A stretch of DNA of 63,123 nucleotides, the filler included, from Hyphochytrium catenoides (taxonomy: Eukaryota > Protista > Hyphochytriomycota): NCBI GenBank assembly GCA_900088475.1. It is 8 parts of 8 records of this genome, joined end to end, with 100 filler letters (N's around TTAATTAATTAA, not from the genome) between each part and the next. Parts side by side here need not be neighbours in the genome. Positions count along the whole stretch, not along the records: positions 19,353 to 33,271 come from FLMG01002094.1; 7 more parts are not named here. One strand, written 5' to 3'. Under the pieces are notes generated by a model. It ran no database searches. It was given only the letters and a program-made list of their open reading frames with translations, and was not told where the DNA came from. Shown piece after piece: positions 19,353 through 33,271 of the stretch. How positions within the stretch are numbered: the stretch's first letter is position 1; every line of letters begins with the position of its first letter. The position numbers and the translations under genes are program-made.

Positions 19353-20571
19353 GCACTCGGAAGCTCTCTCAGGGGTCTCCCGCTTGTTGATAAGGTAGTG
19401 TGGCGCCCCTATGTCATCAGTGGAAGCTCCTTCTCCATCACTGGAAGTCCCTTCTCCACAGATGTTGGACTTGGTTTGGAGAGACACTGGTTAGACTCGT
19501 ACGGCATTGAAGCGATCTCTAGTTTCGTTGTGCTTTTCAAATGCGATGACCTAGGGGGAGAATATTAAGTAGATCTGTCTTCACTTGCAGATCTCAGCCT
19601 AATGAGCTGCAGCTGGCATCCATCACGGCTTTACGTTCGTCCTACAGCCCCTTCTGCAGCAGCGTTCTGAGCGCCTGGCTCCGGTTTAAAGCGGGAGGAG
19701 TGAAAGCCCATTACCAAGGACTCATAGATAAAGGCTTGCAGGGACAAGTGGATGATGGTGAGCTGGGCCTCAAGGTGGACTCTTCCTTTCTGTGCTGTCA
19801 TGATTGAAATGATAGCAAAGATGATGCTTTGTCAATTTGTAGGCGGTCAATCTGGGGTCAAGCCTAGGATGGCTATCAGATTGCCGTCTTAAGCAATAAC
19901 TCTTCTTTGGTGTGGCTAAGCTCTGATTCTGTGTAGACCTAACTAACGCCCTGCACCACTTGGAGCATATGGAGCAGTCTCGCGTGATCCAGAAACGGCG
20001 GTTGACTGAAGCTGACTTCTGGCTGGACAATGACGTAAGAAAGAGAAAAGCGAGGAAGACAGATTTGACTGCTTTGCTACTATGCAGCACTCTCGGACCT
20101 TATACGCCCAGTGCGTAGCTTCTCTTGGACTGCGAGCTCCCTTACGAAATGGCTCTATTCATGTCCTTTGCTGCGTACGATTTAACCCCTCCTTTTCACT
20201 GTTGCTCTCTGCCTTCCGTTAACCCTCCCTATCTGGGTACCTACGCTTCCCCTCTGCCCGCACCTCGTCTCTACTGCGCAGATGCAGACAGCTATGAAGC
20301 GGCTCTTTAGCCACAAAAAGGTGTCAGACCTGCATCTGCCCATGCTCAAGGCTCTATTAACAAGGAAATTTTAGAGCCCTCCTCTCACGACAGGTGTGAG
20401 GAGTCTCTAGGAAAGTTCGATCACCAGCAGAAGAACTTGAGACAGACGTAACGACATGAGCTGTGCCATAAAAGGGCAGCCACAGGAACCCATTGTGGGC
20501 AATCCAGTCTCTTCAGATGAAAGAATGCCCTACAATCTTTTTACTAGTCCAGTCGCCTCGTTTGGTAAGCT

Positions 20572-22341
20572 TTACAGGTTACCTCCAGCTCCTAGCTTCA
20601 CGACAGATCCTTTCGAGTTCTCCATCATATCGACGACCTCGGTCCCCGCTATCACTTTGCCAAATACGGCGTGCTTTCCATCGAGATGAGGGAGAGAGTC
20701 GACGACCACAATAAAGAACTGGCTTCCATTTGTGTCCTTTCCTGCGTTTGCCATTGAAAGGGCATACTTCGTGTGACGAAGGCCAAGCGCGGAAGGCTCA
20801 TCCTCTAAAGAATAGTAAAGTGTGAGATGGAGTTGCGGCACTCAACTCTCTAATCAAAGAGACAACAATGGGAAGAAATTGTATACGGGAACAAGAGAAA
20901 GCAAGGAAGAGCGGGCGGACCGGTTAAGACAGACCTGAAAGTGACAAAATGATTATGGATGGCCTTCAAACATTGGATAGTCTCTGAGAGATAAGAAGGG
21001 AGGGCAGCGCATGGGGGAACGGCGGCCCATGAATTGTTGGGCCAAAGAACTGTGTCTTACCGAAATTTCTTCCATAGATACTCATACCACCCGTTCCGTC
21101 TATAGTGCGGCGTAGCAAAGGGAGAAGTAGTGTCAGGAGGAGGTCTATAGCTTGATCTGAGAAGAGATGTAGAAGAGATGCTCCTGACCTCCCGCGGTGA
21201 TGTCTCCGCACTGCACAACAAAGCCTGGTATAATCCTATGGCAAACGTTATCTTTATAGTGAAGGGACTCGTCCACATCCCCTGTCACTAGTGCTCGGAA
21301 GTTCTCAGCGGTTTTGGGAGCAACATCCATAAACAGCTTCAACAAAGCGCAGAGAGATGGAAGTGTCGTAAGCGTGGAGCACCAAGGCAGGGCGAAGAAA
21401 GATATGCCATCGGCAGCAAGCAAGTAGTGATATTGATAGAAGGACAAGAACGAAATGGACCAACAAGTAGAACGCGGAGGTAATATGAAAAATGAAGAGG
21501 TCTAGCTATCGCCAATGAGTTCAACGACAAAATCGGGAACCGATATAGTGTTACATACCTCGATGGCTAATGTTCCTACTGTCACACTGTCAATCTCTAC
21601 ATCAAGCCAGACATACTTCCGCAAAGGCTGCATCTGGTACGTGCCTGCCAGCTTTTTCAGCATTTCTTCTCTTCTCCTCATGCTATGATTCTCCTGCAAC
21701 AGCCATGTTAGGCCGCCTACCGGCTCGCTTATATGAGAGGCACAACATTGAAACAGCAGCACTAGGGTGTAGCGCGCTAAGTGCAGGTGGAAACAAGGAG
21801 ACTATCGACGGGGGCTTACTTCGTTAGGGTTCTCTAGACTATCAAGGTCCTTTAGAGTTTTCAGATGTTCATAGTCTCCGTTCAGGGCTTGACGAAAGGT
21901 AACATGTGAGTTATCAACATAAAAGCAGGTGGAGGCGCATCACAAAGAGGTAAACCCCAAGGTGACAGCCAAGAGACATGAGAAGAAGAGAGAAAATTTA
22001 GCGGAGGGGGAACCCAAGCACAAGAGAAAGACAAGGATGGGAAAGCCGCCAAGGAGAATGGAGTGGCCAAGATTGGACGAGTAACAGGGAAGACCTGGTA
22101 AGGACATCAGAGTGAGAAACGAGCGAAAGTTCTTCACGATTGAGAAAGCCATTCAGGGAGTAAGACCTGTCTTTTCTATCCGCAACGTGCTATTCAGGAG
22201 GGGTGTGGTGGTCCCAAGTAAGTTGTAGGCTATGATGAGGAGAAAGAGACTCGCGAGGCAGTAGACAAGAACACGTTGGAGCGAGTGGCCAGCGCTGTTC
22301 TGCATAGCCTGCCGTAGCCTTGAGGGCCTCGGAGACCTCAT
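20572..22341 (-). CDS. Cyclophilin-type peptidyl-prolyl isomerase with an N-terminal signal-anchor and stalk, 6 exons
   Basis: Domain motifs [51 protein letters not shown] and [12 protein letters not shown]. Exon 1 (22341-~22168) has basic residues followed by [19 protein letters not shown]. It joins in phase through an exon at ~21820-21887. Confidence 0.9.
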
Positions 22342-23387
22342 TGTGAGATCGCTATGCGTCGTGTATCTTTTCTTAGAGGGACATAGCTCCTCACTTCGCC
22401 TCTAGCCTAACTTGAACGACGATATCCTAACCTGCCTCTCGGACAACTAACGCTCTGCCAGCCGGTTTTGAGTAGTTCTACACAGATATCCAGCTAAAGA
22501 GCTTAAGGGTCTCAGTCCTTCTTGGACCCACCTAACCTGCGACTCAACCTCTGAAGCTTGGTCCTAGCGTTAGTGAAGGGTGACTGGGCACGAAGCCACG
22601 CCACTAGCTGCTGATACGTCGATCGCTGTGAGAAGACGCATCAAAGAAGAGAGAAGCTTGCTCTTGGACTTTTGGCTCTTTTGATTCCCTTTGTTTACTT
22701 TGTATGAGGCATGAGGAAGAGACTCGCTCACCTTGTTGTTCAACATGCAAAAGGACTCAAAAGCAGTAATCACCCAAAACACTTGGTAGTTACTGGGCCA
22801 AGGGCTGGAATCAGATCTCCACCGGCATTGATTCTCAATTTTATCAGGGTCTTTTTATTTGTAACACGCTTCAGAGACAAAGAGAGGTACAGAGAGAGGC
22901 CAAAGAGAGAGGAAAGGGGAGAGACAGAGAGAGGGAAAAAAAGAGAGAAATAGGGGGAGAGAGAGACACAGACAGAGAGAAAGACAGAGCAAACAGAAAA
23001 GTCATTGATAATTTACAAGGCGATAGCCCAACATAATAACCGCGGAATCTCTAAAATTCGAACTCTTGAATAATGAAGCTCTGTTGACATTCCAATAACT
23101 CAACCCAACTAGACAGCAGATCGGCGACACAGCTACCTATAGCGGTACCGTCTCTATGTGGGGGTCTTAATCTGGCGAGATTTCTAAGAGGTCTCGATAT
23201 ACTGTGCATCGGTGGCCAGAGAACTCGGGGTACATTCATGGCCGAAGGCGAGTTATTCGCCAGATAGTTGATAGTCTGCCAGATGTCTGCGCTAGTGGCT
23301 CCTCCTGAGCAGACATCTTGATCCTCTGTGGCAGTGTGGGACGCTCTACTATTACTCGCAGTCTCTTGAAAACAGCTACACTGAACT

Positions 23388-25193
23388 ATGGAGGAGCTAC
23401 CAGACACCAGCAAGAAGGAGATATACACATATGAAGCCCCATGGCTCATCTTCGGCCTCAACTGGAGTGTGCGACAGGACAGAACGAATAGCTTTCGGCT
23501 TGCACTTGGAAGCTGCGTCTATGAATATAACAACCAGATCGAGGTACGCTCCCAGCTATAGCTTGCATTTGCCTATGTTATTTAGTGACAAGGTGGTCAC
23601 AGGTAGTCAGACTCAATGACAGCACGAAGTCCTTCCAGAGAGTGGGGAAGTTTGATCATCCCTATCCTGCCACCAAAGTGATGTGGAACCCCGACACATC
23701 CCCTTCCGGCAGGGATCTTCTGGCAACTACTGGAGACTATCTACGTCTTTGGAATGTTTCGGATAGTGGAATTGGACTGGACGCTTTGCTAAACAATGTA
23801 AGCGTACTGTCCAAGTGCTTTACATCTGTTTTGTGGCCGGCTAATGACACATTTCATGGCGCAGAACAAAAGCAGCGAATACTGCGCTCCGCTGACTTCC
23901 TTTGATTGGAACGAGACCGACCCTAGCGTTTTGGGGACCTCGAGCATCGATACGACCTGCACTATCTGGGACCTTAATGTAAAGTTCTAGCGTTTGTGCC
24001 TTACTACTTGGTCAGACAACAGCAGTTCTACGCCATTTAATCTGTTCATCAAGCGCCTTCACTCTCCACGGCTACTTTGCAGCTTTTGGTTTCTGACTCG
24101 ACTTCCTCGATGGTACTGATAACGCGTAGTGTAATCTCATCTTTGTTTACTGTCGTCGTCCTATCCTACCGACCCCACCGGACCGACTGGATGCCGTCTC
24201 AGACAATGCAAGTGCGGACGCAGCTAATAGCACACGACACTGAAGTCTATGACATCACATTTGCACGAGGGAGGGATGTCTTTGCCTCAGTCGGGAGGGA
24301 TGGTTCTGTGAGGATGTTTGATCTCAGGTAACATGAGATCGGACCGATTAGCTGCGTTTCTCTTTCTGTCACACATGTAGTCGGCAGTAGCTTGACTGAC
24401 TTTCTTTTTCCATAGGAACCTCGAGCACTCAACCATTATCTATGAGTCCTCGGATCTTAACCCACTCCTTCGGTTGACATGGAATAAGCAAGATCCCAAC
24501 TACCTGGCAACATTCATGGCTGAAAGCACCAAAACGATTATCTTAGACATAAGGTAAAGCTCGTTGGTTCTTGATCTTGGGCATCCCTGTCAATTGACGG
24601 CATGCCTGATGATGTCATCAGCCTCCTTCGTCGATGACTCTCTTCTAGACCTCGCCCTGCGTAATACCTAGCCCATAACTCTCATGAGTGACTTGATGTT
24701 CCACACTAACCTGTTACTATTTGGGGGGTCCTGCTATCATCTTGGATGCAGGGTGCCATCGTTGCCCGTAGCGGAACTGGAAGGGCATCAAAGTAGTATA
24801 AACAGTGTAGTCTGGGCTCCACACTCATCTACCCATCTATGTACTGCTGGAGATGACTGTCAAGCGCTTATCTGGGACCTCTCGAATCTTCCCAGACCAG
24901 TAGAAGGTATGCGTCGCTTCAACATATCCTCAAAGTACCTTTTTTCCGTTCTTAGCGGGCTAGTCGACAGAGAGAGGGGCAACAATGAAAGTCTCCTGCG
25001 CTTCTACCGCCTTCATTTCTTTCTTTTTATTTGTCCTCTCAAGATGTTGTACACTGACTGTGGTTCTGCCTTTCCAGACCCTATCTTAGCCTACACCGCA
25101 GAAGCAGAGATTAACAACCTCCAATGGTCGTCCGCTCATCCGGACTGGGTAGCAATAGCTTTTGAGAACAGAATGCAGGTCCTGAGAGTTTGA
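23388..25193 (+). CDS. DCAF7: DCAF7/WDR68 (AN11/TTG1/LWD family) WD40 protein, 7 exons
   Basis: [104 protein letters not shown]-terminal MQVLRV*. Confidence 0.96.
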
Positions 25194-25457
25194 TAGAGGT
25201 ACTATAAGGAAAGACACAATAGAATGTTGACAGCGGACCCCACAATAGAGTATCGTTACTACGGCAAAACGAAGCGGCATCAGTAGAGGCCGGAATCATC
25301 GAAGCAAGTTAATGATGACAGAAGACGAGGGTCCGGCTACCTATTGGTATTGGAGCCATCATATCAGAATCAATGCAACAGCAATCGCTCATATAGCAAA
25401 CACACTCCAAGCTTGACGGTAGCTGGTGGTCACAGGTACGGCCTTATGCCCGGGATC

Positions 25458-28400
25458 CTAACTCTTCGAATTCGAAGCCATAATGTGGCTTAACTGTCGC
25501 GTCTCAGCCACCCTGACTCCCGCATCTCTCACAATCCTGATCAGTCGGGCGGCTTGCAAGTGGTACGTCTGGTAGGATTGTATGTGAAGGAGTGCCTCCC
25601 GGCAAAGGACCTGGATCTTTCCTACAGCACTGCTCGTGTTAGAGTCATTTGAACTGGAGGAGAGCGCATCTGTCTCGTAGCCGCTGTAGCCCTCTGACAT
25701 CCATGCAGGACTGCTGCGATCAAGTTGAGCAGCGACTGCGTCAGCTTGATGTTCCTGAGCCGGTGGGTGAGGGGCCGCTTGCTCAGCCTCAACAACCTGT
25801 GTAGCGCCAGCTCCAGTGTTCAGACCCTCATCTGTTGCTAATTCTGGAATGGAGAGGTGTCGGATGGGAGCGCCTGTCATGGTCACGCTAGACAGACGTG
25901 CTGTCCTCTCTTTTCCTTCGTTTCGCCTAGCTGTGTCTTGGTCATTGCTTTGGGGCTTGTCATTTAGTATCGTAGTCAGATAAGCATCGTCCAAGAACTC
26001 GTCTAATGGTGTACGCTTTGCCTGGTTAGCGTCACCCTCTTTCTTTCCTTCTTGATCAACTCCTCCAGCGCTGCTGCTCTCTTTCTGCGTTGCTTCCTCG
26101 TTAGCAGCTTCTGTTCCTCCAGGGTGGCCGCCACTTTCCTGCTCTATTCCCTTGCCTGCTGGCTCGTTGCTCTTTCCTCCTTCCGGCTTCTCTCCGGTTA
26201 CCACTTCCTCTGGCCCTCCCTCAATTTGGGATTGCATGACGCCGTCGCGATTTGCCTCATGCTCTTTGTCAAGTTGGAGGTTTGCTTGGCTCTCAGCTTT
26301 AATCTCTGTAGTGGAAGATGAAGTTGGAAAGTGTTAAGTCTCAAGCACAATGACACTTTACGGCAACGCTCAACAGAATGACTTAGAGACGCGGTGGAAA
26401 CAGAAGCAAGACACGGCGACTAAGGCTCAACAGGAGAAGAGGGGACAAGAGAAGTTTGATCTCTCACAAAAGCTTCTTATACAACCCAGCTCTACCTTGA
26501 ACGATGTCTCCAACATCCATCAGCTCGTCTTTGGCTTTTCTTAGAATATCGAGCAGCTGGATCTCTTCGGGCTCTAACTGAAGATGGGAGTGGTTCTTCA
26601 TTGCGTTTCCTGATTGTTGTGCAGCCTAAAGCACAGATGAGAGATGGTAGACACAGGAAGGAAGACCAGTTAGGGAGGAGGAAGGCTGACCCTTAACTAG
26701 CGCCGAAGCCATGGGAGGAGTCTGGCTGAAGCTAGTGGAGATGAGGTACAGGAGGCTCGTATTAACGGACGTCTAGCGGAGGCCGCCGAGGGATATATCT
26801 CACCTTGCGCTCCCTCTGCTCCTGATAGCAGGTGTAATACTGCACTCCCACAAGCGTGAGGGGTAGTGCCATATAGAATGTCCCAACCATCATTGCCATG
26901 CAAGCCACAACCCTGCCAACTCGCGTTACCGGGACGATGTCTCCATATCCTGTGGTAGTCACACTAGGGACAAAACAAGTCACGAATTGAGGCAATTTGG
27001 AAGAGAAGCGCCAGATCGCTGAACAGAGGAGGCACATAGAGTCATGCAGACCGGTATAAAAGATCTAACCTCGGGTGTAGACATATCTCTGCACCCGACG
27101 AGTAAGAAAGAAGGGGCCTAACACGAGTAGTTACGAAGGTAACAACGGAACGAGAAGCACCAAACAAACAAAATTGCCCTAAAATGGAAAGGATGGGAGG
27201 TTGAGGACAACAGAAGAGAGGGGATTTTCCGTACGTGACAATGGTCAGCCACATCGCATTGAGGATGTTCGGGAGCTTGGAAGGCTGCTTAAAGTCATTG
27301 ACTAGAACTCTTTTGCCCTCACGGAAGCCCAGGTTTGAGCTTTGAAAGCAAGAAGGGCCAGAGCTCTGAATGTAACATGCTGACCCTTGTTCAAGAAAGA
27401 AAAATACCGCCGCGAAGACTTGGACGAGCACATATAGGACGAAGAGCTGCATTTGGAAGACAGAAGCAGGTGTGAAGATGGATTGTAGAGGGCTATTAGT
27501 GGTTGAAGCACTTTACACTGCAGGCACTAGCTGACCGGGTACGGACAGCTTTGTCAGTCCCTCCGCCGTAAATTCCCTAACTTCCAAGCCAATCTTTCTT
27601 GTTTCACCACTTACCGGAACCATTAGACGGCGCATGCAGACTCGGAGAGTGGTGACCAAGAGGTTCATATCTTCCAAGTACTGTTCATGACGAGGTACAA
27701 GACGATGGGAAGGAACGGCAGGGGACTAAGGGCTCAGGAAGGGTGCAAGGAGGCCTTTAAGGCAGAAACATCAAAGGTAAACGGATGATATCCCTCCTAA
27801 CTTCGATCCAACATGAAATGAAACTACCTAGGTAAGACTGTGAATATGCCTGACGAGGCGGAGTAACACTTTGGAAGAAGGGACGACAGTATGCGGCGAA
27901 GAGAAAGGATCGCTACCCGAGTAAACTTCAATAACCTAAAGCACTGCAGCAGTTTGCCCAGTTTGTATGCGGACATACCACCTGGGGCGAAGGCGAAGTT
28001 GATGGCATAGCCGTACACGAGGGAACGTGAGAGCTACGGAAGAGGAAAGCGGAAGGAAGGCAGTTAGGTTGGTTGCCATAGTCAGCGGACCTATTGGCTG
28101 TCTACGTCAATGAACTGGGCAGGGATTGTCTAGAAAAGTAAGAGCATCTTAACCAAAGTGAGACGGAATCCTCAGGACAACAATGAAGCGCAGAGAGAGA
28201 GAGACGAAAGCCCCAGAGGAACATAAGGAATGAGGGTTTGAGGAAGGGACAAAGAAGCGAGAGGATAAGGGGAAAGGAGATAGGACGGCGCTCAGACCTC
28301 TAGGTAAAACGGGACAACCGAGATGGTGTCGACCATTGCATATCCATCCAAGAAGAATTGAACGGTCGACTTCGCCCCAATAAAGCGCAGGAGGACTTCG

Positions 28401-31400
28401 ACCGAAAAGACTGAAGCGAGAGAAAAGATCAGGTGAGATCCCGTCAGAGAAAGAAAAGGCATAGTGGGTTAACAACTAGCTTGGCGACGTCTGAAAAGAG
28501 AAAGGGTAAGTTGTGACCCTTGGAGCACGCGGCGATTTACGCGGCCTCGTGCCCAGAAAGTCTACTGAACCAAAGGTCAAGGCATCATGCTTTCAGAAGG
28601 ACGAGTTCCGCCTAATGAGTACGTACAAACGACGACGCAACAAGAAGTGCAAAGAGGGAAGAATAGGCACCAGAGATGGAGAATGGGCAGGGATGATTCG
28701 CGTCCTACCGCCACCAAACACGAACTCAAAATAGTTCCAATAGTTCTCGAGGCTGACGACAAGTCCGTGGTCTGGCCGGAAAGTATTGCATTCCAGTCTG
28801 AAGCAGATCCCACTTCGTATGCCGGCATTCTCAGCGTATCTAAACGGCTGGCGGCTGGTGTCACCCCACCATGGAGTGCATAGAGAGTCGTGGGACGCAC
28901 TGTTAGTGCGACTTCTCGAAGGTATGTTGAAGGTAGGGGCTTTAAGATAGGTTGCTTTGAGCAAGGCAAGATCAGGACCATCGAAGGTATAAGACGATGT
29001 AGTGAGGGAGTCGCAGTGGCCAGTGGGATCCTAGCCGTCACCTCCAGTGAACTTCAAGCTAACGAAGGTATCAAGCAGCTAACAGAAGCGAGGGATGGAC
29101 CATTCCCAGTTCCTACGGTCAAGAAGAAAATGTGGCCAAATACCTGTCCTCAATGAGCCTAGACAGGGTTGCATTCTTTGGTCCTTGTCTTTCCCTGCAA
29201 GTCAGGGCCTCTGCTTCGCTGGAGCCGAAGTTAAACCCTTGGCCGAAGCAGCTATCACTGTACTCATTTCGCCCGCAGTCAAACCGTAGAGGCTAGGAAG
29301 AAACCGGATAGGCACGCGTGGGAGCGAAAGGCTCAGTGGGTTTCATTCGAGCTCACACGTCTTCAGACCCAACGCTATAGTTTCTCTGAGTGCTGACTGC
29401 TAGTTTTCCAGTCTCAAGAGGTATAGACTTTCCTTTGTCTCTTTCAGACCTCTATCGTGTGTGACACCTATAGAGGAACTGCCAGCTTACCTTTCTCTCG
29501 TAGTCGACGGTATGTGGCTTGTACAAGAAGCAGCCTGGGTCTGTCTGGGCGGTAACGTTGTTGGAGGTACAATACTCATGAACTGCCATGCGGCAGAGAG
29601 GTGTACTTTCTCCCCACGCCTGGAACTCGGGAGCCGACTCCATCAGGAAAATGATACACGAAATGAAGGTGACGCCCTTGATGAGAGTATTCAAGGCACT
29701 ATTGAGGACAAAACATGGAGAGGAGAAGAAAGGGGAAGGAAATGAGAAGAACAAGGTTTCTCGTGAGCCTCATCTTGGAAGTAAGAAGCTATACTTGGAC
29801 AGAGCACTAGTTGGTGGGAAGCGCGCGTAGCCACCACGTGATGGAATGAGGGGAGCAAATGATATCCCACGGAATGGCGCTCGCCGTCTGCGTGGGAGTA
29901 TGGAAGCGAACCAATAGAGGGTCAGCCCACCTGGCCATCCAAGAGGATTCAGGCACTTCCATCAGAAACCAGATCTGTCGCCTAAAGTCTTCCCATCTCC
30001 TTTGCTGCCTCTTTGCGACATTCAACACAAATGACTGGCGCTTCGTGCTTGAAGTGGCGAGGCTAGGACAAGAGAAAGAGAGGCCCACAACCGGGAAGCG
30101 AGAGAGCCGCGATAGAGGAACTTCTTTAGGTCCTAATGCAAGCAATAACTGAAGAGGATACAGGTGTGATAGTGGAAGACGGACGGAGTAGTAGGAGCAC
30201 GAGAGAAGGAATGAGTGCCATAATGGTCAGGGCAACGACCACTTGCAATGCTTGGATACAAAGCAAAGCATTGACTGCTCTCTTAGAAGGGATTAGATTG
30301 AAAACCGCAGGGAGAGGGAGCTGGATAAGTCCAAGAGCGAACAAAGAAGCTAAAGTCTCACAGTGGCGCTTTAGGAATGGCAATTGTGGACATTCTTTTC
30401 TGTAGATCGTAGCCGCGTTTGATTGCGAGCATATCACGCTTGATGCTCTCTCTTCGCTTCAGTACTGCTTCCTTCAGTGTCACCTTTGAAAGAGAGAGAA
30501 TATTAACGTGCGCAGCGGAGCCATCATTGCAGAAAATGATAAGAAGGCAGGGCTCTAACCAACAGACAATTGACGCTAAGAGGAGAACTTTGGAACTTCA
30601 GCCTCAGTCCACTTGAGGACTACATGCTCGCCATAGGACAGGATAAGAGAGAGAAGTCTAATAAGCTGGTACCCGTCATCACACTCTGTCGCTGGACTTT
30701 CCCTATGATCCTGTCTTTTTCTTAGCTAATCTTGCACCAGTGAACTATTCTCACATACCCAAGTAGCTGACGAACTCTGCAGTCCTGAGATGTCTTGGAC
30801 CATTCGGTGATGTTGCCTGACCAACAGCTTTCCCGTCCTCTCGGCTAATGCAATGGTTCTCTTTATATCTTGGTGAGTGCAATCGGGGAAAGAGGTGCGA
30901 AGGTCTAATTCTGTGATAGTCTCCACCATTGCATTCAGGGAATTAGTTTGCGCTAGCCAGCGGTCAGTGATGAAGTCATGGGGCCGGGCACAGGTGTAGC
31001 GTCCTTGATTGGTCATCAGACTGCACGTAAGCGGCTTGCGTAAGTGAGAACTCCAGGCAAGAACGAGAAATAACAGGGGCACCATCAACGTCTGGTCTTT
31101 GGGGCTCTCTCACGTCTAATCGCATGCTATGTCCTTCAAGGTAACTCCGTTGTTTACCTGTGTCCACTCTTCTTCGCCTTTGTCGCATCCTGAGGGTTAT
31201 TGCCTATCCTGGCGGCGTCCACCACGAGGATGCTCTGCTTCGACCACTCAGGGACATGGCCTCGAGGGCTGTTCTGGGAGTTGAGTGGGTCGGAGGTGGT
31301 TCTACTATCGTCCTGCTGCAATTTCGTAGCGGCTTGAAGTGTTCGGGCAGTCAGACGGTTCTAGGGTGGAGTTTGAGAAAAGGTTAGAGAAAGAGGGAAG

Positions 31401-33271
31401 TGGATGAGGCAATGCAGTAGGTCATAAAGCTCAAATGTGCTAGAAAGTCGCAGAAAGTGTGGGTGAGATCGGAAGACAAGTCGTTGAGTTGCAGCGGAAA
31501 GAACGAAACGAGGACAGTGGGCATATAATAAAACCAAGACGGACGTTAGCCACCTTGGATGAAGATGTGGACAGACAGGAACGTCAGGGGATGCAAGGTA
31601 TACTGGAGTCAGACAGATCGATGTGGGGAAGCGACGTACCGTCTCGGCATTCCAAGCTGTTTGAAACTCGTTGCCAATAATGGCAAGAGGGATAGAGAGG
31701 AAAAGCGAGCCCAAGACCATGCCCACAGAGCCCACAAGCTTGCCCAATGGTGTTTTAGGTACGAAGTCTCCATAGCCCGTACTCGTCATACTAAAAGGCA
31801 GTAGGTGAGAGGGGCGACGGAGAGAGGGAGAGAGGACTTCGCTTGCTTGAAAAATGGGACGCAGAGAGAGAGAGAGACACTAGAAGATAAAGTGAAAAGA
31901 AGAGAGGAAAGGAAAGCAGATTAAGGCAACTAATATTCCCTTACGTTGTGACCATAAAGTAGGCAGCATTGAGCACGTCATTGAACTTGCACTCGTCCTT
32001 TCCAATGCGAAGCAGGTCTAGCGTGGAGCAGGACTCCACGTAATAGACCAGTGTGGACATCATCATCACCAAGACGAGGAAACCAAACAGCTAGAAGGCA
32101 AAGAGGAATAGTCAAAGAGAGAACATGAGGTAAGCAATAGCAAAGACTACACAGGAGGGTGATGGCGCGTGTAAAGAATGGTGAGGACGAACCCAGAAGG
32201 ACAGTGAAACAGGGGAACACGTGGAGAGAAGCATTGGCTTGGAATATGAAGCTTAGAAGTGTCAGGAGATAGCCTTACGGCAAACGGCGTACCGGGACTT
32301 TTAATGGCCCTGCTGACTCCTTCAACGTGGTCACAATGATTCTAGCACCCGTCCAGTGCTAGAGAGATCGCCGGAGTTAAGGAAGAAGGATGCAGGCAAG
32401 GTTGGGATGTGGGGATTACTTGTGAGCAGCAAGACCACGGAGTAGAATAAGGGCGGACAGAAAAGAGCCAAGAAGGGCAAACCATTGAAGAAAGAAAAGG
32501 CTGACGAAAAAGAATCAGACAGGGAGACGCACAGAAGAGGGAGAGACAGAACTCTAAACGTGCAATGTAGCAGAGGGCCACAGGTCAGTAGAGGTCAGCC
32601 AGATTGCCACCACTCTCTCTCATTCCATGTTCTTGGATCTCCAGCACCTCTGAACCCACTTCTAATGAGTCCTCACCTTGATCAGTCTAAATAACCTCAG
32701 GATCCTAAAAATCCTGCAGACGCGGATGACCACTCCGAAGGGGCTCGTATCCTTATCGTTCAAGCGGATAAGGCCCGCTCTATCCGCATAGAACGGCACA
32801 AGCGCTAGGAGGTCGAACCAGTTCATCAATAGACGCACAAATGGCTTCTCCTGGCCCTCCTCTGTCTGTCTAAGGAATGGACTGTGGCATAGCGCGCGGA
32901 TAAGAAACTCAAGAGAGAAGGCAATGTTGATGCCTGTTTCTATATCAGTGTACATCTGGGGAGGAAGCCAACCAACGTTTGTGTGTGGGGAAGCAGAAGC
33001 GTGAGGGTTGGTAGGTAGGTTGAGGTTAGCACGATGAGAGACACAAAGGAGGGGAGGAGAAAGTCGTAGTGAGGAAAAGTGGGAGTCCGTGTCGCGATGC
33101 AAGTAGACGATAGAAGAGAGACCTAGAAACGAGAAAGTAGACCATCGTAAAGGGTGATGTGAGTTCAGGAGACAAACAAGACAAAGCGACGAGGAACAAA
33201 GGATAGAGCTGATTGCTCAAGTGGACGGGCAACTGTTCAAGCTTGTACCTCTTGGGTTGGCAGAGTAGGTC
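25458..33271 (-). CDS. Tandem two-repeat voltage-gated K+ channel-like protein (2 x S1-S6, two GYG pore loops), 5'-truncated at scaffold start
   Basis: Repeat I: FSLEFLIR, WFDLLALVPFY, S4 IRVCRIFRILRLFRLIK, pore TMTSTGYGDFVP. In-phase linker exons follow. Repeat II: RRQIWFLMEVPESSWMA, FSVEVLLRF, VDTISVVPFY, S4 KLGKLLQCFRLLKFTR, pore TVTTTGYGDIVP. The acidic C-terminal tail is ORF 25458-26237. Confidence 0.9.

What the first reader, a model, noticed from the sequence alone, without database searches (positions are those of the whole stretch)
25458..33271. Naturally concatenated two-repeat Kv-type channel (12 TM, two GYG pores)
Seen: two complete S4-S5-P-S6 sets with K+ filters STGYGD (~31770) and TTGYGD (~26945). 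They are linked without a stop by in-phase exons (31361-31158, 31021-30758, 30483-30362, 30062-29931). Established: canonical Kv subunits have one 6TM repeat and form tetramers. Two-repeat 6TM channels (TPCs) lack the GYG filter, and K2P channels lack voltage sensors. Inference: a dimer-forming, pseudo-heterotetrameric voltage-gated K+ channel. Similar tandem sequences may already exist as uncharacterised protist or oomycete entries; I know of no functional study of this type.
Basis: partly seen in the sequence, partly recalled or inferred. Interest (0 to 1): 0.75.

Follow-up and report, generated by a model that had tools for sequence, protein, structure and literature searches.

The report
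Two-repeat (tandem) Kv-like potassium channel gene
This is a many-exon gene for a potassium channel made of two voltage-sensor-plus-pore units in one chain; it looks real, but this tandem type was already described by sequence analysis in oomycetes, dinoflagellates and chlorarachniophytes in 2020, so this is a new member and not a new kind.

Summary
On the minus strand, 33271 to 25458, lie two Kv-like repeats. Each has an S4 with basic residues every third position, and the K+ filters are STGYGD (31783-31766) and TTGYGD (26956-26939).

I built a model of 18 complete exons plus the tail of an upstream exon. All junctions are GT-AG, the phases agree, and the model gives 1169 aa before the stop at 25458. 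S1 of repeat I lies beyond the piece's edge, so 11 of the 12 TM segments are present.

An in-phase exon chain is not evidence on its own: 100 of 100 shuffled linkers also gave one. The case for one gene is homology. A profile of eight proteins that carry both repeats in one chain matches the exons collinearly, repeat by repeat. The matches include signatures specific to repeat II: an 8-cysteine S1-S2 loop and the GKRVL turret. The eight include Saprolegnia, Thraustotheca, Pythium and Pinguiococcus entries and an uninterrupted 981-codon ORF.

No RNA run was listed, so the single transcript is inferred (about 0.8). Pozdnyakov et al. [quoted passage not shown] The organism is unidentified.

Verdict: interpretation supported; new member of a known kind; moderate interest.

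The parts
33249..33271 (-). Tail of the upstream exon (E0, cut by the piece's edge). Last 7 codons read PTLPTQE, then a GT donor. Belongs to the S1-S2 loop of repeat I.
   Evidence: Joined to E1 it reads P-T-L-P-x4-Y, which fits the family consensus P-x-L-P-x4-Y of alignment A1. S1 of repeat I (family HMM positions 1-91) has no match in the piece.
32677..32955 (-). E1: S2, S3 and S4 of repeat I. S4 lies at about 32736-32677, with R-R-R-R-R-K at every third position.
   Evidence: Pfam Ion_trans 2.1e-9. Family HMM positions 92-187, 46 bits. Best PDB matches are Kv4, Kv3, Kv1.2 and Kv2.1. Splice sites.
32293..32358 (-). E2: S4-S5 linker of repeat I (22 codons).
   Evidence: Family HMM 186-208. 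Same length and both borders at the same positions as E14 of repeat II.
31945..32090 (-). E3: S5, a turret with two cysteines, and the pore helix of repeat I.
   Evidence: Family HMM 208-249, 35.7 bits. Scores 33.8 bits on the family's repeat-I HMM against 16.3 on single-repeat Kv.
31640..31790 (-). E4: selectivity filter I (STGYGD, 31783-31766) and S6 of repeat I.
   Evidence: Ion_trans_2 2.8e-7. Family HMM 249-299, 59.3 bits.
31158..31360 (-). E5: inter-repeat linker exon a.
   Evidence: Canonical AG/GT sites, phase 0 to 2. Pyrimidine fraction 0.45, exon-like. Codon log-odds +0.23 in the model frame. No homology support.
30759..31020 (-). E6: inter-repeat linker exon b.
   Evidence: Canonical sites, phase 2 to 0. 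Codon log-odds +0.12. Flanking introns I5 and I6 are compositionally ambiguous. No homology support.
30362..30483 (-). E7: inter-repeat linker exon c.
   Evidence: Canonical sites, phase 0 to 2. Codon log-odds +0.39; only 6 of 182 null ORFs score as high.
29931..30062 (-). E8: segment just before S1 of repeat II, with the motif MEVPESSWMA.
   Evidence: Family HMM 439-482, E 0.001. Fits the family consensus LLEVPxSSxxA. The exon has no ATG upstream of this motif.
29491..29698 (-). E9: S1 of repeat II and the start of the cysteine-rich S1-S2 loop (C, C, DPGCF).
   Evidence: Family HMM 480-546, 43.2 bits. Scores 33.8 bits on the repeat-II HMM against 3.5 on repeat I.
29144..29292 (-). E10: S1-S2 loop of repeat II (motif C..C.G.G.NFGS...C).
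   Evidence: Family HMM 544-580, 31.1 bits. Scores 31.6 bits on the repeat-II HMM and nothing positive on any other HMM.
28709..28854 (-). E11: end of the loop (ICFRLEC) and the start of S2 of repeat II. The acceptor is uncertain: a site 15 nt downstream has the same phase.
   Evidence: Family HMM 604-636. 13.3 bits on the repeat-II HMM. Splice sites.
28298..28410 (-). E12: rest of S2, and S3, of repeat II.
   Evidence: Pfam Ion_trans 2.2e-4. Family HMM 635-676, 30.9 bits.
27917..28033 (-). E13: S3-S4 loop and S4 of repeat II. S4 lies at about 27976-27917, with K-K-Q-R-K-R at every third position.
   Evidence: Weak family HMM match, 678-714, 1.5 bits. Spacing of the basic residues read.
27615..27680 (-). 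E14: S4-S5 linker of repeat II (22 codons).
   Evidence: Parallels E2: 7 of 16 residues identical in the aligned core, same length and same exon borders.
27235..27446 (-). E15: S5, a long turret with two cysteines and GKRVL, and the pore helix of repeat II.
   Evidence: Family HMM 734-812, 38.4 bits. Scores 35.5 bits on the repeat-II HMM against 6.1 on repeat I.
26804..26963 (-). E16: selectivity filter II (TTGYGD, 26956-26939) and S6 of repeat II.
   Evidence: Ion_trans_2 1.2e-9. Family HMM 812-865, 71.5 bits.
26496..26625 (-). E17: C-terminal exon a.
   Evidence: Canonical sites, phase 0 to 1. Codon log-odds +0.23. No homology support.
25458..26305 (-). E18: acidic, low-complexity C-terminal tail, with the stop codon at 25460-25458.
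   Evidence: It lies in a 291-codon stop-free stretch in sequence of about 51% GC. In phase with E17. No Pfam family.

Best explanation
One gene on the minus strand, cut at its 5' end by the piece's edge, encodes a single polypeptide with two non-identical Shaker-type 6TM units. The chain runs: repeat I (S1 missing here, S2-S6 present), a linker of about 230 residues with no recognisable domain, repeat II (S1-S6), and an acidic tail of about 320 residues. [quoted passage not shown]

Inferred mechanism: two chains dimerise, so that four pore domains (I, II, I', II') surround one K+-selective pore. This fixes a 2:2 arrangement of two different voltage sensors and two slightly different filters, as TPCs do for non-K+ pores and K2Ps do without voltage sensors.

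Shown here:
- Both repeats carry a GYG filter.
- Both have an S4 with 5-6 basic residues at every third position.
- Both have the S2 F-x-x-E-x-x-x-R and the S3 D of the Shaker charge-transfer centre.
- Both have a 22-residue S4-S5 linker exon of Kv1-4 length.
- Repeat II carries a cysteine-rich extracellular S1-S2 loop of about 130-150 residues that is conserved in the family.

Inferred only: the single mRNA, dimerisation, K+ selectivity and voltage gating.
For: 1. Two-repeat content: Pfam Ion_trans and Ion_trans_2 match exons of both repeats.

2. Gene model: 18 exons plus a partial first exon, all 18 junctions GT-AG, consistent phases, no internal stop, 1169 aa.

3. Family: an exhaustive search with exon E1 and a word search with hit P0016 recovered proteins of 900-1500 aa, each with Ion_trans and Ion_trans_2 twice and two GYG-type filters. 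P0016 is an uninterrupted 981-codon ORF on a 3.1-kb contig of 33% GC. Others come from annotated oomycete and ochrophyte genomes.

4. Collinearity: an HMM of eight such proteins matches the window's stop-free segments in one order, HMM 92-865. Repeat I exons fall on repeat I positions and repeat II exons on repeat II positions.

5. Repeat identity: the repeat II exons sum to 203 bits on the family's repeat-II HMM. They sum to about 79 bits on repeat I and about 100 on single-repeat Kv. The 8-Cys loop, DPGCF, NFGS, the RPEC-like motif and GKRVL are all shared with the family. The repeat I exons sum to 144 bits on repeat I against 126 on single Kv.

6. The exon before S1 of repeat II (E8) starts in phase 2 and has no ATG upstream of its conserved motif.

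7. Linker exons have exon-like composition (pyrimidine 0.41-0.50, against an intron mean of 0.62) and positive codon log-odds in the model frame.

8. No gap between linker exons exceeds 300 nt, which leaves little room for a terminator and a promoter.

9. The repeats are only about 30-35% identical to each other, so this is not a recent tandem gene duplication.

10. The closest solved structures by profile are Kv4.2, Kv1.3, Shaker and Kv2.1 (E 1e-67 to 1e-47); no TPC is among the 60 listed.
Against: There is no transcript evidence: no RNA run was listed for this DNA, and no close relative (over 40% identity) exists in any searched collection for comparative support.

Linker exons E5-E7 have no homology support.
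- An in-phase GT-AG chain is found in every shuffled linker.
- The codon statistic discriminates weakly: 6 to 48 of 182 null ORFs score as high.
- Introns I5 and I6 are not pyrimidine-rich, so the exact linker structure could differ.

Repeat I exon E1 scores higher on a panel of single-repeat Kv (55.7 bits) than on the family's repeat I (45.2 bits). That panel was partly selected by similarity to E1.

Function is untested for every member of the family. The filters carry T where canonical K+ channels have V or I.
Confidence: 0.8

Rival explanations
1. Two adjacent, separately transcribed single-repeat Kv-like genes in head-to-tail order. The 'linker exons' would be the 3' coding end of gene 1 and the 5' end of gene 2, or not coding at all. 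Each product would tetramerise, or the two would co-assemble.
For: There is no RNA evidence for a joint transcript. In-phase exon chains arise in all shuffled linkers. E5-E7 lack homology support. I5 and I6 are compositionally ambiguous. In-frame Met codons exist in E7 and E8.
Against: All detected relatives that carry the repeat-II signature (8-Cys S1-S2 loop, GKRVL turret) have it as the second half of a two-repeat chain. The window has the repeats in the same order and on the same strand. No non-coding gap in the linker exceeds 300 nt. E8 begins in phase 2 and has no ATG before its conserved motif. The linker exons are compositionally exon-like.
Confidence: 0.1
2. One gene with alternative products. 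Besides the tandem mRNA, retention of intron 4 would yield a single-repeat (repeat I only) subunit. The intron (31639-31361, 279 nt) is open in frame up to the TAG of its own acceptor.
For: The frame-0 stop-free stretch 31879-31364 runs through E4 and the whole of intron 4 and ends at the acceptor's TAG.
Against: Intron 4 is strongly pyrimidine-rich (0.69) like the other introns, and its codon score is negative. An open 93-codon stretch in CT-rich sequence is not unusual. No RNA data were available.
Confidence: 0.05
3. A decaying or non-functional copy (pseudogene) of a tandem channel gene.
For: No expression data. S4 of repeat II matches the family profile only weakly (1.5 bits).
Against: No frame disruption or internal stop across 18 exons. 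All splice sites are canonical. Every functional motif is intact: both GYG filters, both S4 ladders, the S2/S3 acidic residues and all 8 loop cysteines.
Confidence: 0.03

Closest known systems
[quoted passage not shown]
   Same: Two 6TM Kv-like repeats in one chain. Each repeat has a GYG-type filter and an S4. The repeats share low identity (about 30%) and each keeps its own identity. The two S4 segments carry unequal numbers of charges (6 and 5 here).
   Different: That survey listed members from Aphanomyces invadans, Phytophthora infestans, Prorocentrum minimum, Alexandrium tamarense and Lotharella globosa, and it found none in apicomplexans or ciliates. I could not establish whether the subfamily this gene belongs to, the one with the 8-Cys loop in repeat II, was among those analysed. 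Its loop motifs are absent from the paper's trimmed alignments. The paper reports short and long S4-S5 linkers in the oomycete channels. Here both linker exons are 22 codons long.
Uncharacterised two-repeat proteins found here: P0031 (Saprolegnia diclina SDRG_01798), P0032 (Thraustotheca clavata), P0036 (Pythium oligandrum), P0035 (Pinguiococcus pyrenoidosus) and P0016, P0033, P0034, P0037 (unnamed assemblies)
   Same: Collinear match over both repeats. Shared repeat-specific motifs: EPC..D.C.F in turret I, LLEVPxSS before S1 of repeat II, an 8-Cys S1-S2 loop with DPGCF, NFGS and RPEC, and a GKRVL turret in repeat II.
   Different: Only about 25-35% identity in the aligned exons. The window gene has a different, non-alignable linker and a long acidic tail. 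It has about 18 introns.
Shaker-type Kv1-Kv4 channels
   Same: They are the best solved-structure matches for both repeats. S4 ladder, S2 F-x-x-E-x-x-x-R, S3 D, a long S4-S5 linker and a GYGD filter are shared.
   Different: Kv subunits have one 6TM unit, form tetramers and carry an N-terminal T1 (BTB_2) domain. The tandem relatives list only Ion_trans and Ion_trans_2, and there is no PVP motif in S6.
Two-pore channels (TPC1-3)
   Same: Two 6TM repeats per chain, so a dimer forms a pseudo-tetramer with two different voltage-sensor domains.
   Different: TPC filters lack GYG and are Na+/Ca2+-permeable (established knowledge). No TPC is among the 60 best PDB matches of the family profile. No EF-hand or other Pfam domain was found in the linker.
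K2P and fungal TOK1 two-pore-domain K+ channels
   Same: Two GYG-type pore domains per chain, and a dimeric pore with two-fold symmetry.
   Different: K2P (4TM) has no voltage sensor. TOK1 (8TM) has only one S1-S4-like unit. Here both pore domains have their own complete S1-S4.

Membership tests
[quoted passage not shown] 2020) | Two 6TM Ion_trans repeats, same strand, in order | tested here: met
   Pfam hits on exons of both repeats. Collinear family HMM match over positions 92-865.
[quoted passage not shown] 2020) | Both repeats in ONE polypeptide or transcript | tested here: inconclusive
   A canonical in-phase 18-exon model exists, and relatives are single ORFs. No RNA run was listed, and in-phase chains also arise in shuffled sequence.
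[quoted passage not shown] 2020) | K+ filter motif (T/S-x-G-Y/F-G) in each repeat | tested here: met
   STGYGD at 31783-31766 and TTGYGD at 26956-26939. TTGYGD and STGYGD also occur in family member P0033.
[quoted passage not shown] 2020) | First and second repeats each cluster with their own kind | tested here: met
   Exon-wise HMM scores. Repeat II exons: 203 bits on the family's repeat II against 79 on repeat I. Repeat I exons: 144 on repeat I against 78 on repeat II. No tree was built, because that would need joined exons.
[quoted passage not shown] 2020) | Low identity between the two repeats (about 30% or less) | tested here: met
   17 of 49 residues identical in filter-S6, 7 of 22 in S5 and 7 of 16 in the S4-S5 linker.
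Shaker-type Kv (Kv1-4) | Voltage sensor: basic residues at every third position of S4, with the S2 F/E and S3 D charge-transfer centre | tested here: met
   Repeat I has R-R-R-R-R-K and repeat II has K-K-Q-R-K-R. F-x-x-E-x-x-x-R in S2 and D in S3 are present in both. The Shaker residue positions come from my own knowledge.
Shaker-type Kv (Kv1-4) | One 6TM unit per subunit, homotetramer | tested here: not met
   Two units per inferred chain.
Shaker-type Kv (Kv1-4) | N-terminal T1 / BTB_2 tetramerisation domain (PF02214) | not testable with these tools
   The N-terminus lies beyond the piece's edge. The tandem relatives list only PF00520 and PF07885.
Two-pore channels (TPC) | Non-GYG filter, with closest similarity to TPC or Cav/Nav repeats | tested here: not met
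   Both repeats have GYG filters. The best PDB matches are Kv1-4, Cav repeats follow far behind, and no TPC is among the best 60.
K2P / TOK1 | Pore domains without their own S1-S4 (K2P: none; TOK1: only one) | tested here: not met
   S2-S4 of repeat I and S1-S4 of repeat II are both present.

The most novel reading that the evidence does not exclude
The gene may come from a eukaryotic lineage in which tandem Kv-like channels have not been reported. No relative above about 36% identity exists among 1.84 billion representative proteins, and the 2020 survey found none in, for example, apicomplexans or ciliates.

It may also define, with the Saprolegnia, Pythium and Pinguiococcus proteins and unnamed marine-assembly proteins, a distinct and ancient subfamily. 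In that subfamily the second voltage sensor carries a conserved disulfide-rich extracellular domain of about 130-150 residues in its S1-S2 loop. That would make it a built-in heteromeric Kv channel whose second sensor could respond to an extracellular ligand or partner.

Three intron positions are shared between the repeats. This would then show that the internal duplication happened in a gene that already contained introns.
Probability: 0.25. Interest if true: 0.55.

Novelty: new member of a known kind. Interest (0 to 1): 0.35.

Why it matters
Tandem Kv-like channels are natural concatemers. They fix a 2:2 arrangement of two different voltage sensors and two different pore quarters around a K+ filter. 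Electrophysiologists build such arrangements artificially to study subunit cooperativity. In the papers I could search, no member has been expressed or solved.

This locus adds three things:
- A member far from all known ones, with a full exon-intron map.
- Evidence, from three shared intron positions, that the two halves arose by internal duplication of a gene that already had introns.
- A conserved cysteine-rich ectodomain on the second sensor.

If the host organism is a parasite, the channel has no counterpart in animals or plants. The 2020 paper made the same argument for oomycetes.

Tried and rejected
1. RNA evidence: the look-up of sequencing runs (kind rna) listed no run, so read laying could not be used.
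3. Exhaustive protein search with exon E1: the best hit was 36% identical, with no orthologue and no self hit.
4. Word search with the family profile A1: swamped by generic Kv words; it added only P0045.
5. Word search restricted to the repeat-II-specific part of P0016: only the query itself.
6. Exact look-ups of two window ORFs: not on record.
7. Metagenome scan with E1: only relatives of 28-33% identity, L002-L009, so no comparative test of the linker was possible.
8. Organism identification failed: the Atlas search on the neighbouring WD40 exon was uninformative, and Rfam found nothing. My impression of a coccidian-like genome (CT-rich introns, acidic low-complexity tail, about 50% GC) is untested. 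The absence of any orthologue in annotated apicomplexans argues against the well-sequenced ones.
9. 'In-phase exons' as evidence: rejected after the shuffle control.
10. Codon log-odds against 182 null ORFs discriminates only weakly, because it mostly detects 'not CT-rich'.
11. AlphaFold2 of relative P0016 with the 8-sequence alignment: mean pLDDT 54.8, pTM 0.47. Only its secondary structure (12 TM helices and 2 pore helices) is usable, and I ran no fold search on it.
12. Pfam on the linker and tail ORFs: no family.


Full report
WHAT IS THERE. The piece (19353-33271) has about 50% GC and carries three genes:
- a cyclophilin on the minus strand (about 20572-21762);
- a DCAF7/WDR68-like WD40 gene on the plus strand (23388-25193);
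- the channel gene on the minus strand, from the piece's edge at 33271 down to a stop at 25458.

Exon-sized ORFs of the channel gene hit Pfam in both halves. Repeat I gives Ion_trans 2.1e-9 on S2-S4 and Ion_trans_2 2.8e-7 on filter-S6. Repeat II gives Ion_trans 2.2e-4 on S2-S3 and Ion_trans_2 1.2e-9 on filter-S6.

GENE MODEL. I used stop-free segments, the DNA itself and a family profile. This gave 18 complete exons plus the last 7 codons of an upstream exon at the very edge (PTLPTQE, 33269-33249, followed by GT).
- All junctions are GT-AG, most acceptors follow a pyrimidine tract, and the phases are consistent.
- There is no internal stop. The 18 exons encode 1169 aa.
- Joined to E1, the edge fragment reads P-T-L-P-x4-Y, the conserved S1-S2 loop motif of repeat I in relatives.
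- Family HMM positions 1-91 (N-terminus and S1) have no match in the piece. S1 of repeat I therefore lies outside, and 11 of the 12 TM segments are present.

IS 'IN-PHASE EXONS' EVIDENCE? No. A dynamic-programming search for any GT-AG, stop-free, in-phase chain across the 1941-nt linker succeeded in 100 of 100 block-shuffled sequences, with similar coding length. Three other statistics help only modestly:
- Codon log-odds, trained on the homology-supported exons, are positive for E5-E8 in the model frame (0.12-0.39 bits per codon). They are negative for nearly all intron frames. Against 182 unrelated ORFs of the piece the separation is weak.
- Pyrimidine content separates exons (mean 0.49) from introns (mean 0.62). 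E5-E8 are exon-like at 0.41-0.50, but introns I5 and I6 are ambiguous.
- No non-coding gap in the linker exceeds 300 nt.

THE STRONG EVIDENCE: A FAMILY WITH THE SAME LAYOUT.
- An exhaustive HMMER search of 1.84 billion representatives with E1 found no close relative. The best hit was 36% identical.
- That search did find several proteins of 800-1750 aa with two or four matched stretches.
- One of them, P0016, is an uninterrupted 981-codon ORF on a 3.1-kb contig of 33% GC. Its Pfam layout is Ion_trans, Ion_trans_2, Ion_trans, Ion_trans_2.
- A word search with P0016 recovered named relatives of the same layout. They are Saprolegnia diclina SDRG_01798, Thraustotheca clavata 'VIC superfamily', Pythium oligandrum and Pinguiococcus pyrenoidosus. 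It also recovered three unnamed proteins.

An HMM of these eight proteins (alignment A1) matches the window's segments in one collinear series:

| Region | Window coordinates |
|---|---|
| S2-S4 I | 32967-32680 |
| S4-S5 I | 32358-32290 |
| S5-pore helix I | 32090-31944 |
| filter-S6 I | 31792-31640 |
| pre-S1 II | 30043-29921 |
| S1 II | 29697-29485 |
| loop | 29292-29179 |
| loop-S2 | 28820-28713 |
| S2-S3 II | 28420-28295 |
| S4 II | 28027-27917 |
| S4-S5 II | 27668-27612 |
| S5-pore helix II | 27455-27234 |
| filter-S6 II | 26965-26804 |

Scored exon by exon, the repeat II exons are specific for the family's repeat II: 203 bits, against 79 on repeat I and about 100 on single-repeat Kv. The repeat I exons sum highest on the family's repeat I (144 against 126 on single Kv). 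This second result is less distinctive, because repeat I is the more generic Kv half.

The family signatures of repeat II are all present. They are eight cysteines in the S1-S2 loop with DPGCF, NFGS and an RPEC-like motif, and two further cysteines and GKRVL in the turret. The pre-S1 motif (MEVPESS) sits in an exon that begins in phase 2 and has no upstream ATG. The two repeats share only about 30-35% identity, so they are not recent tandem duplicates. Together this makes inheritance of an already fused gene the simplest reading. I put one gene at about 0.8 and two separate genes at about 0.1.

HOW IT PROBABLY WORKS (inferred).
- By profile, the closest solved structures are Kv4.2, Kv1.3, Shaker, Kv2.1 and Kv3.1, at E 1e-67 to 1e-47. 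Cav repeats come far behind, and no TPC is among the best 60.
- S4 of repeat I reads R-R-R-R-R-K and S4 of repeat II reads K-K-Q-R-K-R, in both cases at every third position.
- Both repeats have the S2 F-x-x-E-x-x-x-R and the S3 aspartate. Both have a 22-codon S4-S5 linker exon of Kv1-4 length, which suggests a domain-swapped arrangement (Shaker positions from my own knowledge).
- Two chains would therefore build a pseudo-tetrameric, two-fold symmetric, K+-selective, voltage-gated pore with two kinds of sensor.
- The filters have T where V or I is usual. TTGYGD and STGYGD also occur in family member P0033.

WHAT IS KNOWN. Pozdnyakov et al. [quoted passage not shown] The species were Aphanomyces invadans, Phytophthora infestans, Prorocentrum minimum, Alexandrium tamarense and Lotharella globosa. 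They stated that none were found in apicomplexans, ciliates and several other SAR groups. Prole and Marrion 2012 (PMC3283738) listed no such channel in parasitic protozoa. A full-text search found no other paper on these channels and no functional study. The kind is therefore known and this is a new member. I could not tell whether the 8-Cys-loop subfamily is one of the published clades.

LIMITS.
- No RNA run was listed. No close relative was available for comparative tests. The organism is not identified.
- The AlphaFold model of relative P0016 was of low confidence.
- I did not search, fold or place in a tree the joined conceptual protein.

Noticed in passing
window 32677/32358, 32293/32090 and 31945/31790, compared with 27917/27680, 27615/27446 and 27235/26963: Three introns sit at homologous positions and phases in the two repeats: S4 | S4-S5 linker (phase 0), S4-S5 linker | S5 (phase 0), and inside the pore helix at VT|T just before the filter (phase 2). 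The two linker exons are both exactly 66 nt. This suggests that the internal duplication copied a gene that already had introns.
   Followed up: partly
window 31639-31361 (intron 4): This 279-nt intron right after S6 of repeat I is open in the exon's frame up to the TAG of its own acceptor. If it were retained, the product would be a repeat-I-only protein.
   Followed up: no
window 29698-28709 (E9-E11) and alignment A1: The S1-S2 loop of repeat II is an extracellular segment of about 130-150 residues. Eight cysteines are conserved across the family, with DPGCF, C.G.G.NFGS and RPEC-like motifs. Both turrets also hold a conserved cysteine pair. I found no mention of this domain in the 2020 survey's text or supplements.
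   Followed up: partly
P0004 (1748 aa, unnamed assembly, contig 9215 bp): A protein with four Kv-like 6TM repeats. The filter motifs are TVGYGD, TVGYGD, TCGYGD and TVGYGI. It appeared among the hits to E1 and has no cyclic-nucleotide-binding domain evident in its sequence. It looks like a four-repeat K+-type channel.
   Followed up: no
P0009, P0014, P0015, P0045 (800-930 aa; transcriptome and metagenome sources): A second, distinct subfamily of two-repeat Kv-like proteins. Both repeats have TVGYG-type filters, there is no 8-Cys loop, and both repeats score as generic Kv.
   Followed up: partly
window 23388-25193 (+) and 20572-21762 (-): The neighbours are a DCAF7/WDR68-like WD40 gene and a cyclophilin gene, both with several introns. 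The WD40 gene and the channel gene converge, and their stop codons are only 265 nt apart.
   Followed up: partly
window 22889-22966: A purine-rich (AG) 36-nt tandem repeat, 2.2 copies, in the 1.6-kb divergent intergenic region between the cyclophilin and WD40 genes.
   Followed up: no
L002-L009 (metagenome contigs): Eight environmental contigs encode S2-S4 segments 28-33% identical to E1. I did not examine them for a tandem layout.
   Followed up: no
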